In this document: in pieces, positions 1,483 through 51,427 of the stretch | Numbering within the stretch: the first letter of the stretch is position 1 | Layout: every line of letters begins with the position of its first letter | Assembly: GCA_021613535.1 (NCBI GenBank) | Contig: CP075493.1 | Location: 8,556,001-8,620,000 of the forward strand | Length of the DNA stretch: 64,000 nucleotides | Reading direction: 5' to 3' | Origin: Adineta vaga | Lineage: Eukaryota > Animalia > Rotifera | Position numbers and translations under genes: made by a program | The notes under the pieces: generated by a model | Seen by the model: the letters and a program-made list of their open reading frames with translations, nothing else | Told to the model about the DNA's origin: nothing | Database searches by the model: none

Positions 1483-4400
1483 TGATAAAATGAATATAGT
1501 GATGATCGATGAAGCGCAACTATTGTTTTTGTGTTTTTCTTTATAACAATGTCGTTTTATTCTCGGTAAACAAATGACTGTTTGTTAGTTGACAACATAA
1601 CATAATCTATACGATAGTCATGAAAATAGTCGAAATCAAGGAAGTTAGAAAGAAAAAAAATAAGCGAGAAAAGAAAAAAAGAACCTTCTTTGTTCTCTCT
1701 TTTTACTACTAATTTCTTAATTTAACATATAAAAGAAAAGATACAATTCATCTTTTTTTCTGTTCTTACGGAAGAATAATACTTAGAGAGCATGAACATA
1801 AAGATACGAATAGTATATTATGTATAGATATCATTTGCCTTAGGGAAATAGAAAATAATAATTAGATAAGAAGAAAACTATTGATATAATAATCTACTTT
1901 TTCTAGACATCACTTATTCTTACCTATTGATATAGTATTATTCACCATATCACTTAAAAATTGACTGGATTTGCTTTTGAAAAATCGAAGTAATCCCATG
2001 ATTGATTTGATCTGAAGATTTCCTTCAATAATGGGGTGTATTTATATATGTACACAGATGAGAATAAGAAGCTGAATAATAAAATAGTTTATATTATTCG
2101 AAATGCAAATAGATCTAAAAATTCCCCACATAGACAATATATAGATCAGTTCAAAGTCGAATTATTTCAAGAAACAAAGAATGTACTTACATTCTGATGC
2201 ATTCTTAGCAGTTCGTGGATTAGTTTTGAAAGCATAAATTTACAAGAATTTCTCACGAAAATAACTCAGAATGTTAATTAAAACAGATGGAATAGGATGG
2301 GTCATGTATGATATAGAATAACTTTAGGCTTATCTAATGTTTGTTTTGTTTTCTATATTCATCAATAAGTTCTAAAATATATGTCCGCGTTTGTATATAT
2401 AATTCTACAGGTAACTATCACTCGCTAATCGTATGCTCGTCATGTGTTGCAATTATTTATCTCACCTGTATACGCAAAGGATAAAGAACAAATCTCAAAG
2501 TTCGGATCTCTCAATCTGACTCAATCTATTTGTTTAATATACATAGAAACATCATCGCCTCCACTAAAATATTATCTTCTCATGAGTCAATATGTTGATT
2601 TATGTATAAACAAGTTATACATACCAAATAATGCAATAACGTTTGGGAAATGTTATATTTATGTCGTTTAAGAAAACGGAGAAAGACAGAATGTCGACGT
2701 GAGAATTTTGTTGACGTTTGTTGCAACTCTGATAATTTTTCTTCTTTTTAAGGGAGTTACGTATCGATGGGAAAAAGAAAAGGGAAATGATGTCTTTTTT
2801 TCTCCATCATATGACTCTGAATAAGTCAGGTGTCGTATAGACGAGTCCTCTTTTTATGTCATATGATAAATTTGAGTGGGTTATTCATGCAGGGTGACAT
2901 GAAACACATTATTATTTTATTTTATGGCAATTACCAATCTATCTATTCGATTATTTTGATGTCAAGAAAAACATTCTAGTGAATTTTTTGTTGAAAAATA
3001 TCGGTGAAATTTTATTAGTTACCTGCTTGGAAAAAATCTCGTGTTTGAACTCAATTCTCTCACAGAAAAGAAAAAGATTTATATACGTACGTTGTCTGTG
3101 ACCTCCTCCGTAGAGTACTTTATTTTACCGCCTTGAATAGTCGAGAATACAGAAACGGAAAAAAATATGCACTTTTAAACGTACCTGACAGGAGATGTGA
3201 GAAAGGTATTACTTTCAGGACAAATAAATATTACAAGAGTCATATTTTACATTATAATTGCGTAACACTTTATATTCTTAAACGAAAAGTACATGCTTCA
3301 TGCAAAAAAAAATAAAATGCTCAAGTGTAAGTTCTTCGTCACAAAACATTAAGATAGAGTTTCTTTCACGATAGAAACTATTATCGATATACGTAGATAA
3401 GAAAATATGTTTTATTCAAGTTGGAATGTACTCGAATAAGAATTTTTCAGTCGCAGAATTTTTTAAATTTAACTTAGATTTGATAAATACGCAGATAGAT
3501 ATTAACTACGAGAATAACAATAAGGTATGTATGAGATATTTAATTACGTAATAGATAAAGTTATCTATGTTGTTTTTATTTACAATTTAATTGGTTGTCT
3601 ATACACAAAGTTTGTTATAAAGAATTCTATTAATATAGTATATTTCTAATTTTGATGAATAATTATGTTTATAGACCGGTTGAATTTTTAATAGTAAACT
3701 GAAATATTCCGATCTACTTTCATGTAATTATCTCTCATTGAAAGGTGTATGCATGCATGCATGTGTTCCTTGAATATTTAAAAATGTTTTACTCATATTG
3801 AACAAATTGACCGATTGAACATTCTAGTAGATCACAGTAACAATATCAATTAAATGATCGTTTAACACTATTTTCCAACGTTTTGACATCGGTAAATATC
3901 AAATATATTTTTCAGTGCCATTAGATACGATAATAAAGTACATAAAAATCTTCGAAAACATTCTTCTGCATGCTTCTTCATCAGTAAGATTTCATTTCGA
4001 TTCTTATCTTTATCACATTTGGTACATTGACCAGCACGTGTATATACACGTGATTAGGTTCTCTGAACTTTCTCTTTCTTTCTTTCTTTCTTTCATTAGA
4101 TACATCAAATATGAACGTACAATTATTGATAGATGGATACAAAAGAAACAGTAGTAAGTCTTGATAAAGTAATGAGAACAATGTAATCGATATTACATCA
4201 GAACAATATGATGAACGATTTTATTATATTGGCTTTTACTGGAAAAAAAACTCACATAACATATGTTTAACCAAAGTGCATTCATGTTCACATACGATTG
4301 AAAAAAAGAAGAAGTAGTAGTCATAAAATATTTAATTAATCATGATCTATATAGTAATGCATGAATTACACAAGTTAGTTTAAGAACAAACATGAGTGAA

Positions 4401-45597: not shown

Positions 45598-48500
45598 TCA
45601 TTCTAGTTTTTTCAATGTGTATTGATGTGATGATGCAACATTAAGGAAAAATGGTGATTCACGATTAGGTTCAAATGTAGCTGGTCGAATTGTATATGTA
45701 CCACCAGGTATATTATCAAGTGTTAAAACACAAAATCCTGATCGATATGAACCTGATTCGGTCTTATGAAATTCTCCCGAAGAATTGGAAACTCTTGTTT
45801 CTGTACAGATAACTTCAAAACCAACTTGAAATTGTTTTGGTGCACGTAGTTCAATTTTAACTTAAAAAGAAAATGATTTGAAATCAGAATGAAAATTACT
45901 TTATTTGTACATACTATGATTATTTGCTTCACGATTCTCTAAGACAAGTTGAAAGAGTGGATTATTTTTGAACGTTGATGGATTATTTTGACAACCACCA
46001 GCAGATTTACCTTTCCATTCACCTGTTATTTCTTGTTGATAACGTGGATTATAATAATCAGGTGCTGGAGTTAAACTAAATTCACATGTCGAATAAACAC
46101 GTAAGGAATAATAAATATCAACATTTTTTTCGTATTGAGATACCTAGAAAAATGATATACAGTTTCTAGTTAAACGTATTAGATAATAAAGATGAAAAAC
46201 AATAATTTACCACAAGAGTATATAAGGTTTGTCCTTGTAAATCTGCATCATCAGTCACAAGTTTAACTAAATAATGTGCTGAATTTGTTTTCACACCATC
46301 TTGGATAGGTTTTATTTCATTTGGATAATAAACTTTATTACCACCATTTTTATATACAAATAATGTTATAAAGATTCGATTAACTGCAAAATCTTGTCGT
46401 TCTGTAATATGTCGTGTTAAAAGAATCTGTTTAAAACAAAAACTAAATGATGTATCTAGAAAAACAAATAGATGAAAAGAACAAACCCAAATCGATGCTT
46501 TAGTTTTTGGATTAACTCGAAGAACATATTGTGGATTATCACCAAGATTATAAAGATCTTTGACTGGTCCTTGTCTTGCTGGCCAAGAATTATGTATACA
46601 TGATGTATACGAAAATAATGATGGTGACCAATTCAAATAGAAATTTTCAAAATGATGACATAAACTATTATAATCAATCCAGAAGACTCCATTATCAACA
46701 TCAACTTGTAATTTTGGATCATAATTAAGTGCTTTGATTAGTTCAGGTGTCCAATTTCGAGTATCATAATCACTGAAATTACCTTTCCATTCCAAATGTG
46801 ACCAAGGATTTTTTAACATTACTAATTTATGTCCACTGATCTGACGCATATCAAGTAATGCATAAGCATGACTGGAAACAAGACCACTACGTTCTTCTTC
46901 CTCTTTAGAAAGATTTGGTGTTGCTAGATAATTTGAGAGAAATGAAGATAATAGAAGAAGAAAAATAAATAAATAAATCCTACCAACAGTAATCAATACA
47001 TGTCCAGCATGAAAACGTTCGAACATTCGATCAAATTCTTTATCTTTATCGAATGATGCTTCAGCATGATGAATAGAAACAAGTTCTGGTATCCAACCTA
47101 AAAAGATGTCATTCGATTAAGATTCTATACTAAAGATCAAATGTATAGATTCTTGATAACAGTACTAATCATAAGAGATGAGTTAACTTGATGATGATGA
47201 TGATGTATTTATCTCTAGACTCACTCATTTTTATCAGTTTCAGTACTTAAAGGTAGATATGACTAAAACAAATCAGTAAGTGCACATCAATAGAAAGAAG
47301 ATTGATTATTCTGCTGAGTATTGATGAAATATTCTTTCGAAAAAACATTTCTAGTTGAAAATGCAGACTGTAGCTATTGGATTTGTCTTAACATACCAGT
47401 TAATGCATGTAGATCAACAGTTGAATTTGAACCAGGAAAATCGTATCCACCCATGACTTTCATATATGCTTTTTCTAATAAACTAACCCAAATTTCATCT
47501 TTATTCGTCGTTGATGAACATAGTAGACCTAGAAAATGTTTATTGTAGTTCTATTTTGATTTATTTTATTGAATTTACGATTGGAACGATCAACTGGTAA
47601 TGTATCATCAATAATAACTTTTCGCCAAACACCGTTCAAATGAAAACGAATCATATATTTTCCACATGGATTATAGATTGGTTCACCTAATCGATCAAAA
47701 CGAAAAAGATTAATTGATAAATTTCTTTCCAAATCAAAAATTAACCTTGTTTATTTTGTGGATAAATAATTGATGTAATCAAACGTTTGTTAAATTTCTT
47801 TTCATATTGTACACTAACAGCAAGACTAGCAACAAATGAACAATCCGATATAAGATCTTGTTTGATGGAGAAATATGATAAAGCCATGATCATTTTTGGT
47901 TCCGACATGATTTCATCAGGTCGTGCCCAACGTGCAAAATGAGTCTGTTGTTTTGGTGCTAATTTCAATGCACCATGAGTATCATTAAATGGTGTTTGAT
48001 ATGCGAAACGTTCACGTAAATCAATATTAAAAAATGGAACATAATCACGTCCATTAATTTTCGATCCACGTCGTAAAACATCTAATTCATGTGCAGATAA
48101 TTTTGCTCGTTTATCGATAATATTTATATTTGCTTGATCAATATCAAGTGGTTGTTGTTCTTCATTTTGAATAATCTCATCACGTGGCGGAGATGGTAAA
48201 CGTACATGTGATGATGTATTGAGTTCCGTTCGTTTTAATTCTTCAGCACGTTCCAAAGCTATACGAATAATAAATCGAAACTTTTCCTAATCAATCGTGT
48301 TTTATTTTCTTACCTTGATAAGCTATTTTTTCTAATTGTTCTTTGATTTTTGCATTATCATTGGTTTTCTTTTCATTAAGACAGAGTGTGATTGCTTCTT
48401 GATATGATTTAAAAGCAGTCTCATAATGTTTTTGTTCATCTTCATTAAGTGCTTGTGTTAATAAATATCGAGCACGTTCAACACCTTTTTCTGAAGTATT

Positions 48501-48791
48501 TTTCAAATGAAGACTCTGAGCTGGTTTTGATTTTAAACTAGCTTTGATTTCTTCTGCACGTTTAATATAATTATGTATTAAGCGAACGATTTCAGCCAAA
48601 TCAATCGTTGATGCTGATGAAGATTTTGATTGTTGTCGATCAGAAACCAATTGTTCACGAACACTAATTAATGCTTGAGCAGCTTCCACATAGAAGAATA
48701 CTGCATCTTCACTTTTACCTTTTGAATCAAGATCAACTGCTTTAGATGCATGTTTACGTGCATCACTTTCGAGTTTAGCAATATCAACCAT
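45598..48791 (-). CDS. CAPN7: Calpain-7 (PalB homolog): two MIT domains, CysPc, calpain domain III repeats
   Basis: Tandem MIT helices ([17 protein letters not shown]; [17 protein letters not shown]), [13 protein letters not shown] (Cys), HAY (His), KNPW (Asn), NPQY, and PATFEP near the end. Stop at 45598. Confidence 0.95.
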
Positions 48792-49540
48792 TCTTTTGTT
48801 GTTGTTGTTGTTGATATTAAATTGAGGAAGTCATTGAAAAAAACTAGTGTTATATCAATGACGTCGGTCCTGCTTTACTTTACTCATTCAGTTTACCATT
48901 GGAGTTTTGCCATCTTTTTATGATTATATATCATTGGTGACAGTGGCAATCGACGGATGATAGAGACATCTAGTCTATAGTCTGATGAAGATCGATAAAA
49001 TTATAGCTAGCAAAGTCGAGTTAAATTATGAGAAAATCATTACATAAAATTTTGATTTAAAAATATTACTCGATGAATATTAGTTTTATGAACATACATT
49101 TCATATATTATATGTTGAATATCTTCGTTTTTGCTAGCAAGCTGTTTTTTCTTGAAAATATTCACCAGCGTTCGAATTTCATTTGCAAAGAAATGATATA
49201 AAAGATTACTTTTGTCTTCGTAACTGATTGTCAATCAGTTCTGAAGTTGAAAGTATGAAAGACAAAGAAAATGTCGATGAGAAAAATATGGAAGAGGAGA
49301 AAATAGATCTATATTAGATAGCGAGCAAACAAATATTGAATAAAATCGCAACCAAAACATTGCACTAAGTAAAAGCGGACCACGCCATATTCTTTCTTGT
49401 TTTCATATAAACGAATTCAATAATTTTATTGAATACGAATGTGAACCTGCGCGTGAACATATCAATATGTGCAAAATCATATTCATTTCTTTTCTTTCCA
49501 TTCAATATTCCATCCATATCTCGAATAAGATGAAAATCGT

Positions 49541-49843
49541 TCAGAAACAACCGTTGCATGAGCAAACACCATTCGGTCCAAAATGATGTATTCGATTCGC
49601 ATCACGAACGAAGATGTCACATTTATGAATCGCAGCAGTCAACTTTGTTGCTTAATTTACAATGTAGATGATTAGAGAATAATCTCAAAGATTCAAAAAA
49701 TACTTACGACAATCTCCACACACTCGCAAGTTTTTTGTCAATTGTATCATTTTTGTATTGGGATTTACGACAAAATTCCATGCTATTGCCAGCTTTTCGC
49801 TATGCCCACAAAGTACAGATTCTACAGTTTCATCTGCTTGCAT
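49541..49843 (-). pseudogene. DYW-type cytidine deaminase domain (PPR-DYW C-terminus), spliced and probably decayed or truncated
   Basis: Exon 49843-49708 encodes MQADETVESVLCGHSEKLAIAWNFVVNPNTKMIQLTKNLRVCGDC, followed by a GTAAGT donor. The second exon encodes ..ATKLTAAIHKCDIFVRDANRIHHFGPNGVCSCNGCF*. HSEKLA, KNLRVCGDC, VRD, HHF and CSC are hallmark DYW motifs. In-frame stops lie just upstream and no PPR array is visible. Confidence 0.85.
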
Positions 49844-50369
49844 CAAAGTGTCATATTATTATGGATTATTTTTCATGAATACAGACATTTCATTTCCAAA
49901 CTTTCATGCATATAAATTCACATCCTCATCACTGTCGATCGTATTTTCATTGTCCACTTCGTATGACGCATTCGTCAGGACATTATCAAGTATTTGGCAT
50001 GCTTGTTCAACAGGTTTCTGCTCATGAATGTTATCTGAAGAACGATAAGAACTATTCTTTACCAGGTGATTGGCTAACAGAGTCAGCGCAGACACACCAT
50101 CTTGAATTTTACTTTCGTGAGAGTGCATAAAAACACATGCAAACTAATCGATTATTGTATTGATTATCCAATTTTTTTCTCTTACGCTAACAGCGCAAAG
50201 TTACGTGACGAAACATGGCGCTGTAGACTGATTTCTTCATTTGCGAAAAGGAAAACAAAAAGTAGTAATGTATTTTTTTTTCGGAATCAAATCATTTTGA
50301 AAAGGATTATAATATATATTTTTGTGCAAAACTAATTCTAGTTATACAAACTTCTAAAATAAATAGAAG

Positions 50370-51427
50370 TTATTTAAAAAGATTTCCAACGAAAATACAA
50401 GCAAGAACCATAAGACCCGTTGTACGATTTGACACGAATGTATGCCAACAGGATTGATTATCATTTAGATGAACTCTTTCAATTTGTCGGTAAAGATGAT
50501 ATCCAACACCTACTAACCCAATATAATATGGCCATGTCTGATTAACACCTAAACCTACTGTAATAAGATGTGTTAACATTCCAACTGAAAAAGCACGAAG
50601 CCATAATTTAGAATCTTTATCAAAAAGAAGTGCAGTTGATTTTACACCAATAAGTAGATCATCCTGTTTATCTTGATGAGCATAAATCGTATCATAATGA
50701 AGTGTCCAACAAATACTAGCAATATATAATGGAAATATAATTGATCCATATACATGACCCGTAACAGCAGTGAAGCCCATTAATGTACCCCTAAGAAGTA
50801 ATTTTTTCAAAATAATCGAATTGTTTGATCCATACAAAAGTTGTCTACTCACCAATTCAATGTAATTCCCAGAAATAATTGCGGCCAATATGTATATCGT
50901 TTCATTATCGGATAGATACACACAGGTATTAGTGATAAGACACCGATACCGATTGTCGGTAGATTCAATTGGATTAATATGATAAAACTCAATGATAATT
51001 GTACAACAGTCCAAATTATTCCTTGTCGAATCGTAAGTTGACCACTTGCTAATGGTCTCGATTTAGTTCGTTCTACAAGACGATCATAGTCTTTATCTAA
51101 AAGATCATTTATTGTACAACCAGCTCCTCGCATCAATATCGTTCCAACACCAAATAGTACAAATAGAGAAAGAGTATCTAATGATGTTTCTGCTAGTGCA
51201 ATACTCCATGCTGCTGGTAAAAATATCACCCAAGAACCAGTTGCTTTATCAAGTCGACTTAAACGAATGTATGGATGGAATGATCTTGGTGCAATATCAA
51301 ATACTGATCGTGAACGAGTTGTTGAGCTTTTCTTCGAGAAACATTGTCTAAATATTGATATTGTTGAAAGACGAAAGATTGTTGAATGTGAAAACAATGA
51401 GCATGTAGGACGTAACAACGGAATCAT
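50370..51427 (-). CDS. COQ2: 4-hydroxybenzoate polyprenyltransferase, mitochondrial (UbiA family), 2 exons
   Basis: Mitochondrial-type presequence, RLDKATG, GAGCTINDLLDKDYDRLVERTKSRPLASG, YPIMKR and YDTIYAHQDKQDD. Intron 50791-50852 joins LNW|GTLMG. Confidence 0.95.

What the first reader, a model, noticed from the sequence alone, without database searches (positions are those of the whole stretch)
49541..49843. Hidden DYW RNA-editing-type deaminase domain: relic or stand-alone mini-protein
Seen, and absent from the ORF track: a two-exon DYW domain with an intact HSE..CGDC catalytic zinc site, VRD, HHF and CSC, ending NGCF instead of DYW/DYF. The likely ancestral acceptor appears mutated (tgtaa|AT TAA GCA: AG lost plus a stop). 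However, an AG 6 nt downstream (intron 49651-49707, 57 nt) restores the frame. That gives an 81-aa ORF from ATG 49843 (..CGDC-PTKLT..) lacking the His after CxxC, a ligand of the second zinc. Established: PPR-DYW proteins perform organellar C-to-U editing in plants, and homologs have been reported sporadically outside plants, including bdelloid rotifers, where their function is unknown. Inference: this is most likely a decaying copy. It does indicate an intron-bearing DYW family in this animal, with possible uncharacterised RNA-editing or defence roles.
Basis: partly seen in the sequence, partly recalled or inferred. Interest (0 to 1): 0.8.

Follow-up and report, generated by a model that had tools for sequence, protein, structure and literature searches.

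The report
Dead fragment of rotifer DYW gene
This is a real but broken 318-base leftover of the tail end of a plant-type PPR-DYW "RNA-editing" gene, lying between two ordinary genes of a bdelloid rotifer; the family is already published for this animal, so the find is ordinary.

Summary
Window 49541-49846 (minus strand) encodes the C-terminal part of a DYW deaminase domain in two pieces. Each piece passes Pfam's own cut-off for PF14432.

It is a gene fragment, not a gene. Similarity to paralogs covers only 318 bases (49527-49844), at about 90% identity, and stops sharply on both sides. The PPR repeats, the E motifs and the first ~60 residues of the DYW domain are absent. Both flanks are unique in the genome.

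Compared with eight paralogs, this copy has:
- lost the intron's acceptor (AG to AA);
- gained a TAA two codons into exon 2;
- changed the terminal DYF to GCF.

That frame would lack 40% of the domain and the histidine after CxxC.

Transcript contigs cover both neighbouring genes but not the flanks of the fragment. Every contig lying on the fragment carries paralog sequence at its ends.

The genome (a bdelloid rotifer, about 40 DYW loci) belongs to a published family: 60 DYW-type PPR genes in Adineta vaga, Mol Biol Evol 2026. This scan has already reported the family on other DNA of this genome.

One small oddity remains. The exon-1 piece is far less diverged than the rest, probably through a gene-conversion patch.

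The parts
49527..49844 (-). Whole block of similarity to PPR-DYW paralogs: a 318-base relic made of the end of the DYW exon, the intron, the last exon and about 17 bases of 3' UTR
   Evidence: blastn against 29 paralog loci: L028 89.9%, L002 89.3%, L004 88.4%, always query 557-874 = window 49844-49527. Alignment A1 shows similarity ending abruptly on both sides.
49708..49844 (-). Exon-1-derived piece: ..QADETVESVLCGHSEKLAIAWNFVVNPNTKMIQLTKNLRVCGDC plus the first base of the split His codon. HSE lies at 49796-49804 and CGDC at 49709-49720. The ATG at 49841-49843 was made by a window-specific ATA>ATG change.
   Evidence: Pfam PF14432 47.5 bits, profile 15-56. 97% identical to L028. Aligns to residues 65-101 of the OTP86 DYW structure 7O4E. 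ATA>ATG is shown.
49657..49707 (-). Remnant of the family's 51-base phase-1 intron. The GT at 49707-49706 is intact. The acceptor AG is mutated to AA at 49658-49657.
   Evidence: All three close paralogs read ATAG|AT GAA GCA. G at the 49657 position is present in all eight paralogs compared, so A is derived here. Paralog transcripts use that acceptor (joint 49653/49708 with CAT between; loose ends at 49708).
49652..49654 (-). In-frame TAA stop in the ancestral exon-2 frame (GAA in the close paralogs)
   Evidence: GAA E > TAA *
49651..49652 (-). It would give a 57-base intron and CGDC-P-TKLT. No use of it was seen.
   Evidence: Sequence reading. No contig in four transcript-bearing runs joins 49708 to 49650.
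49541..49656 (-). Exon-2-derived piece: (H)*ATKLTAAIHKCDIFVRDANRIHHFGPNGVCSCNGCF plus TGA. The terminal DYF of the paralogs is changed to GCF (49544-49552).
   Evidence: Pfam PF14432 33.4 bits, profile 60-91. Aligns to 7O4E residues 106-135. 84-85% identical to paralogs together with the intron. Codon changes are listed.
49845..50369 (-). Upstream flank, unique in the genome and unlike anything upstream of the DYW part in paralogs. It contains the end of the COQ2-like mRNA (poly(A) near 50274) and an orphan 74-codon ORF (49904-50128).
   Evidence: Only a self match in the genome. No Pfam family. No similarity to the L028 locus by blastn or tblastx. The X5 contig ends at 50274 with a T run.
48877..49526 (-). 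Downstream flank, unique in the genome, with no transcript contigs. It runs to the start of the calpain-7-like mRNA (about 48876).

Best explanation
The feature is a non-functional, 5'-truncated DNA fragment (pseudogene relic) of a bdelloid-rotifer PPR-E-DYW gene.

A 318-base piece was copied at the DNA level, since the intron is retained. It comprises the last 45 codons of the DYW exon, the 51-base intron, the last exon and a few bases of 3' UTR. The source was a member of the L028/L002/L004 subfamily on the same chromosome. Alternatively, the piece was left behind by deletion of the rest of a copy.

It sits in the intergenic space between a COQ2-like gene and a calpain-7-like gene. It has no PPR tract, no E motifs and no first ~60 residues of the deaminase domain. 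Its own lineage then lost the splice acceptor, gained a stop two codons into exon 2 and mutated the terminal DYF.

It makes no deaminase and most likely no product at all. Shown: the anatomy, the derived state of the lesions, the uniqueness of the flanks, and the absence of locus-specific transcript contigs. Inferred: how the fragment arose (ectopic capture during break repair versus deletion of the rest).
For: - Identity: PF14432 hits above the cut-off for both pieces.
- Extent: similarity to paralogs is limited to 49527-49844 with sharp ends. Flanks are unique in the genome and unlike the paralog locus.
- Parent type: the closest paralog, L028 (154 kb away), is a full gene with a presequence-like N-terminus, PPR exons (PF01535/PF13041), E motif (PF20431), E+ (PF20430) and DYW.
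- Lesions: acceptor G>A, GAA>TAA, DYF>GCF. The two DYF changes and the acceptor change are derived here by comparison with eight paralogs. The stop codon's base could not be polarised.
- Exon-2 changes: against the consensus of the three close paralogs, exon 2 shows 8 amino-acid-changing codons (one of them the stop) against 3 silent ones, as expected without constraint.
- Structure: the pieces align to residues ~65-101 and 106-135 of the 138-residue OTP86 DYW structure 7O4E. The N-terminal ~60 residues are therefore missing.
- Transcripts: spliced contigs cover both neighbouring genes but leave 48877-49535 and 49845-50294 empty. Contigs on 49536-49844 carry 2-9 mismatches and run on into paralog sequence. 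For example, the loose end at 49844 equals L004's upstream exon, and the loose end at 49708 equals the paralog exon 2 spliced at the canonical acceptor.
- Annotation: no protein of 29-93 residues more than 83% identical is in the 5.8-billion-protein collection.
Against: - The exon-1 piece is oddly well kept: 4/137 differences to L028 against 28/181 in the rest (Fisher p 1.3e-4).
- A window-specific ATA>ATG change creates a start codon exactly at the fragment's 5' edge.
- An in-frame alternative acceptor exists.
- The transcript evidence comes from assembled contigs, which show presence and not absence. Only one read-laying run was allowed.
Confidence: 0.9

Rival explanations
1. Stand-alone mini-protein. 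The ATG at 49843 would start either an 81-residue product spliced at the alternative AG (49651/49652), or a 53-residue product by intron retention (ORF 49685-49846). It would act as a short DYW-like or zinc-binding peptide, perhaps in trans like plant DYW1.
For: - The frame exists.
- The exon-1 piece has only two lineage-specific changes, one silent and one creating the ATG.
- Plants do have short trans-acting DYW proteins. DYW1 is in the PDB as 7W86 and matches this piece.
Against: - No transcript contig is specific to the locus and the proposed junction is not seen.
- The exon-2 part evolves freely and has lost DYF.
- The product would lack the His after CxxC.
- It would also lack the first ~60 residues of the fold. 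Even DYW1's 117-residue chain starts 38 residues earlier.
- No such protein is on record.
- There is no promoter evidence. The fragment lies between a poly(A) site and the next gene's start.
Confidence: 0.03
2. Non-coding role. The fragment, 94-97% identical to paralog exons over 137 bases, would be kept as a template for small RNAs or antisense RNA that act on the L028/L002/L004 subfamily, or as part of the calpain-7-like gene's upstream regulatory DNA.
For: - Low divergence of the exon-1 piece.
- From my own knowledge, not tested here: bdelloids are reported to direct piRNA-type small RNAs at foreign genes.
Against: - No long transcript contigs lie on the locus. Small-RNA data were not examined.
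- A gene-conversion patch explains the same pattern without any function.
- A second, more decayed relic of the same subfamily exists, which shows that such fragments simply decay.
Confidence: 0.05
3. Assembly artefact: paralog reads wrongly placed between COQ2 and calpain-7.
For: The exon-1 piece is nearly identical to a paralog.
Against: - The block carries 23 bases found in none of the three close paralogs, and 14 are derived relative to eight paralogs. It therefore cannot be made from paralog reads.
- DNA-type runs from an independent 2013 study hold 58-83% of the sampled words of the 3.8-kb stretch.
Confidence: 0.02

Closest known systems
Bdelloid rotifer PPR-DYW gene family (plant-type, horizontally acquired; 60 DYW-subgroup PPR genes reported in Adineta vaga, PMC13386178; rotifer DYW clade also in PMC4202320 and PMC3239186)
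   Same: Same domain sequence, same phase-1 intron after CGDC and same DYF-type ending in the parent subfamily. It is 85-97% identical at the DNA level to the paralogs L028, L002 and L004 on the same chromosome.
   Different: Only the last 318 bases of such a gene are present. The acceptor is lost, a stop is gained and DYF has become GCF. There are no PPR repeats, no E motifs and no PG-box half of the domain. No transcript of its own was seen.
Land-plant DYW deaminase domain (OTP86, PDB 7O4E/7O4F; designer PPR-DYW 9KFX)
   Same: HxE and CxxC zinc-site motifs, VRD, HHF and CxC, all aligned to the solved structures.
   Different: It covers only residues ~65-135 of 138, interrupted by a dead intron and a stop. 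The His after CxxC is not encodable in the alternative frame, and the terminal tripeptide is changed.
Arabidopsis DYW1 (PDB 7W86), a short trans-acting DYW protein
   Same: A DYW-only polypeptide without PPR repeats is a known working arrangement in plants. The fragment matches DYW1 residues 39-80 and 85-114.
   Different: DYW1 keeps the upstream part of the domain and an intact C-terminus, and it is expressed. This fragment starts 38 residues later, is broken, and shows no expression.
Second relic of the same subfamily at G000:C1:2057805-2058021 (L037)
   Same: Also a 5'-truncated piece with the same intron, on the same chromosome.
   Different: It is more decayed. HSE is missing, CGDC has become CEDC, the donor GT has become CT, exon 2 has a deletion of about 10 codons, and a stop lies inside CSC.

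Membership tests
DYW deaminase domain (Pfam PF14432) | Significant match to the family profile | tested here: met
   47.5 and 33.4 bits for the two pieces against a 24-bit cut-off; 68.7 bits in the genome scan
DYW deaminase domain (Pfam PF14432) | Catalytic zinc site HxE...CxxC | tested here: met
   HSE at 49796-49804 and CGDC at 49709-49720, aligned to HSE/CxDC of 7O4E and 9KFX
DYW deaminase domain (Pfam PF14432) | Complete domain, including the N-terminal PG-box part (~60 residues before HxE) | tested here: not met
   Similarity to paralogs starts 12 codons before HSE. Profile positions 1-14 and everything upstream are absent. The pieces align only to 7O4E residues 65-135 of 138.
DYW deaminase domain (Pfam PF14432) | Second zinc site: His after CxxC, HxF, CxC | tested here: not met
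   HHF and CSC are present. The His codon C|AT depends on the dead acceptor and is followed by TAA. The alternative acceptor gives Pro.
DYW deaminase domain (Pfam PF14432) | C-terminal DYW or DYF tripeptide | tested here: not met
   Paralogs end NDYF; this copy ends NGCF through two derived changes
PPR-E-DYW editing-factor gene (functional member) | PLS-type PPR tract and E motifs upstream of DYW in one gene | tested here: not met
   Present in L028. The window's upstream 525 bases have no Pfam family and no similarity to L028.
PPR-E-DYW editing-factor gene (functional member) | Uninterrupted, spliceable reading frame | tested here: not met
   Acceptor AG>AA and TAA at 49652-49654
PPR-E-DYW editing-factor gene (functional member) | Transcribed and spliced | tested here: inconclusive
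   No locus-specific contig in four transcript-bearing runs, while both neighbours and the paralogs are covered. Contigs cannot prove absence.
PPR-E-DYW editing-factor gene (functional member) | C-to-U editing activity on RNA | not testable with these tools
   Needs an assay. Not known for any rotifer member according to PMC13386178.

The most novel reading that the evidence does not exclude
The exon-1 piece (49708-49844) might be kept by selection rather than by gene conversion. It has only two lineage-specific changes, one of which creates an ATG at the fragment's edge. It could then serve as a 53- or 81-residue zinc-binding micro-protein, or as an RNA template that cross-talks with the L028/L002/L004 PPR-DYW subfamily.
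Probability: 0.04. Interest if true: 0.5.

Novelty: already known. Interest (0 to 1): 0.1.

Why it matters
It matters little. The fragment adds one dead piece to a gene family already described in bdelloid rotifers, and it says nothing new about what these genes edit. Two minor uses follow:
- It is a dated by-product of family turnover, showing that partial DNA copies of PPR-DYW genes are scattered into gene-dense chromosome cores.
- Its uneven divergence is a small candidate example of ectopic gene conversion between dispersed paralogs in an asexual animal.

For annotation, it should be marked as a pseudogene fragment. RNA-seq reads mapping on it should be treated as cross-mapping from paralogs.

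Tried and rejected
- **Hidden upstream exons.** I looked for PPR, E or PG-box exons upstream. The 74-codon ORF at 49904-50128 and the whole 525-base flank have no Pfam family, no copy elsewhere in the genome and no similarity to the L028 locus.
- **Old in-place gene.** I located the COQ2 ohnolog (C4:3830083, 60% identity). It has neither a DYW piece nor the calpain-7 neighbour within 3.3 kb, so it is uninformative.
- **Processed retrocopy.** Rejected. The intron is retained, there is no poly(A) at the 3' edge, and paralog mRNAs run at least 55 bases beyond the fragment's 3' boundary.
- **Deaminase-type hypermutation of the exon-2 half.** Rejected. The derived changes are of mixed types.
- **The same locus in other samples.** An exact 24-base junction word found nothing in metagenome contigs. 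An exact look-up of the neighbouring MIT-exon ORF also found nothing. Both tools may leave out the window's own genome.
- **An annotated mini-protein.** The word search with the 53-residue ORF found only 58-83% identical exon fragments of other rotifer DYW genes.
- **Not done.** The joined two-exon model was neither built nor searched, by instruction. The large representative search and structure prediction were not needed.

Full report
**Observation**

- From the ATG at 49843 the frame reads MQADETVESVLCGHSEKLAIAWNFVVNPNTKMIQLTKNLRVCGDC.
- A single C (49708) follows, then GTAAGT.
- Fifty-one bases on, where the family has its acceptor, the sequence reads ..TGTAA|AT TAA GCA ACA AAG...
- From there the frame reads ATKLTAAIHKCDIFVRDANRIHHFGPNGVCSCNGCF and ends with TGA at 49543-49541.
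- An AG at 49652-49651 would restore a frame, giving C+CA = Pro and then TKLT.

Pfam's DYW_deaminase model (PF14432) matches both pieces. The first scores 47.5 bits (E 1.6e-12, profile positions 15-56) and the second 33.4 bits (E 4e-08, positions 60-91). Each exceeds the 24-bit gathering score.

The two exons were searched apart, by reference.

**The family in this genome**

The window is G000:C1:8556001-8620000 of a 100.8-Mb assembly in six contigs. Earlier notes of this scan call it a bdelloid rotifer, Adineta vaga.

A six-frame scan with PF14432 gives 72 matches, which amount to about 40 loci. Most appear as a pair: profile ~1-60, then ~58-92 some 30-60 bases further on. Translations around HSE show the same break in nearly all of them..KNLR(V/I)CGDC followed by reading into GTAAG. 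The phase-1 intron right after CGDC is therefore a family trait. Two loci (L001, L013) lack it.

The closest paralog, L028 at C1:8759862, lies 154 kb from the finding and is a complete gene. It has a presequence-like first exon, several PPR exons (PF01535, PF13041), an E motif (PF20431), an E+ motif (PF20430) and the DYW domain.

The family is published:
- A rotifer DYW clade was noted in 2011 and 2014 (PMC3239186, PMC4202320).
- A 2026 paper counts 191 PPR genes in A. vaga, 60 of them DYW-type and 58 of those expressed. It argues for transfer from plants (PMC13386178).
- This scan has also reported intact and broken members on other DNA of this genome.

**What is at this place**

blastn of window 48800-50400 against 29 paralog loci gives matches that always start and stop at the same points, window 49844 and 49527. 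Identities are 89.9% (L028), 89.3% (L002) and 88.4% (L004), with 67-76% to the rest of the family over at least 100 bases.

The alignment shows similarity beginning within an exon, 12 codons before HSE. It ends about 17 bases after the stop codon.

Upstream, where the paralogs read ..EFRAHDRSHPRS..ELIQHGHKYNSSWVTRPI, the window has unrelated sequence. That sequence is unique in the genome, has no Pfam family and has no similarity to the L028 locus even by tblastx. The downstream flank is likewise unique.

Only 318 bases of a PPR-DYW gene are therefore present. They lie between a COQ2-like prenyltransferase gene (50373-51427+) and a calpain-7-like gene (MIT exon 48314-48791).

**The lesions**

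The three close paralogs read ATAG|AT GAA GCA ACA AAA TTG.., which gives CGDC-H-E-A-T-K-L. They end ..CSCNDYF-TGA.

The window copy has AA for the acceptor AG, TAA for GAA, and GGT TGT for GAT TAT (DYF to GCF).

Five more distant paralogs served as outgroups. By that comparison the acceptor change and both DYF changes are derived in the window copy. The stop-creating base is found in no other copy, although the outgroups cannot polarise it.

Against the consensus of the three close paralogs, exon 2 shows 8 codons with amino-acid changes (one of them the stop) against 3 silent ones. That fits a lack of constraint.

Mapped on solved structures, the two pieces cover residues ~65-101 and 106-135 of the 138-residue OTP86 DYW domain (7O4E). 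A full rotifer DYW (L001) aligns from residue 4. About 60 N-terminal residues of the fold are thus missing.

The natural short protein DYW1 (7W86) still starts 38 residues before the point where this fragment starts.

**Expression**

One search for runs and one laying of contigs were allowed. All four runs chosen carry spliced transcripts.
- The calpain-7-like gene is covered from 47744 to ~48876, with a GT..AG joint at 48258/48314.
- The COQ2-like gene is covered from ~50274-50323 to 51437, with a joint at 50789/50852. One contig ends in a T run at 50274, which marks a poly(A) site on the minus strand.
- No contig lies on 48877-49535 or 49845-50294.

Contigs do lie on 49536-49844, but they are not from this locus.
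- They carry 2-9 mismatches.
- At 49844 they continue with the reverse complement of ..GACTTCCAGTTGGATCACACGTCC, which is L004's upstream exon sequence in alignment A1.
- At 49708 they continue with the paralogs' exon 2 (AT GAA GCA ACA AAA TTG ATT..), spliced at the canonical acceptor.
- The single joint reported there (49653/49708 with CAT between) is that paralog junction forced onto the window.

Contigs show presence and not absence, so silence is likely but not proven.

The word search with the 53-residue intron-retention ORF found only 58-83% identical exon fragments of other rotifer DYW genes. It found no protein of this locus.

**Origin**

Three points argue for a DNA-level copy and against a processed retrocopy:
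- the intron is kept;
- there is no poly(A) tract at the 3' edge;
- paralog mRNAs run at least 55 bases beyond the fragment's 3' boundary.

I cannot tell from one genome whether a 318-base piece was captured during break repair or whether the rest of a larger copy was deleted. The COQ2 ohnolog on C4 has no DYW piece and no calpain-7 neighbour nearby, so it is uninformative.

A second, more decayed 5'-truncated relic of the same subfamily lies at C1:2057805-2058021. Such fragments are evidently shed and left to decay.

**An oddity**

Divergence within the fragment is uneven. Against L028 there are 4 differences in the 137 bases of the exon-1 piece and 28 in the 181 bases of intron, exon 2 and UTR (Fisher p 1.3e-4). 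The paralogs compared among themselves show no such contrast.

| Class of change | Exon-1 piece | Rest of fragment | Fisher p |
|---|---|---|---|
| Derived in the window copy | 2 | 12 | 0.028 |
| Derived on the stem of the three paralogs | 0 | 7 | 0.021 |

The stem counts mean that in its 3' part the window copy branches off before L028, L002 and L004 split. In its 5' part it does not.

The simplest reading is a gene-conversion patch over 49708-49844 from an L028-like copy. One transcript contig (X11, record 8) comes from a spliced paralog or allele. Its exon-1 part apparently differs from the window only at the two window-derived bases, which would make it a plausible donor.

Selection on the exon-1 piece is the alternative. 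I give it a few per cent because the adjoining exon 2 decays freely, the fold is incomplete and no transcript is seen.

**Verdict**

The mini-protein idea is not supported. The family is already known in this animal, so the finding is ordinary.

Noticed in passing
window 49708-49844 versus 49527-49707: Divergence inside the relic is mosaic. The exon-1 piece is 97% identical to L028 and the rest 85% (Fisher p 1.3e-4). The 3' part branches off before L028, L002 and L004 split, while the 5' part does not. This is probably an ectopic gene-conversion patch.
   Followed up: partly
L037 about 2800-3020 (G000:C1:2057805-2058021): A second 5'-truncated relic of the same DYW subfamily. It starts at ..WNFVANPNTKMIQL. 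CGDC has become CEDC, the intron donor GT has become CT, exon 2 has a deletion of about 10 codons, and a stop lies inside CSC.
   Followed up: partly
L002 and L004 (G000:C1:6450933 and 6467849): Two tandem PPR-DYW copies 17 kb apart share the same TAG 22 codons before HSE (HGHT*..SSWITRP). Both are nevertheless represented by spliced transcript contigs that cross-map onto the window fragment.
   Followed up: partly
G000:C5:15.2-16.1 Mb and G000:C4:14.29-14.68 Mb: Most DYW loci sit in two dense clusters. The C4 cluster lies within 1 Mb of the contig end (C4 is 15.22 Mb long). The relic studied here lies mid-chromosome among ordinary animal genes.
   Followed up: no
window 49904-50128 (minus strand): A 74-codon ORF lies between the COQ2-like poly(A) site and the DYW relic. 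It has no Pfam family, no other copy in the genome and no transcript contig, so it is probably a chance ORF.
   Followed up: partly
L035 5662-6719 (G000:C4:3829661-3830718): The COQ2-like gene has a 60%-identical second copy on C4 (an ohnolog-like pair). The search reported two TAA stops inside that match. I did not check whether they are intron read-through or damage.
   Followed up: no
run X11, record 8 on window 49708-49844: A spliced paralog transcript contig has only 2 mismatches to the window in its exon-1 part, apparently the two window-derived bases. It is closer than the assembled L028 (4 differences). This points to an unassembled allele or copy of L028.
   Followed up: no
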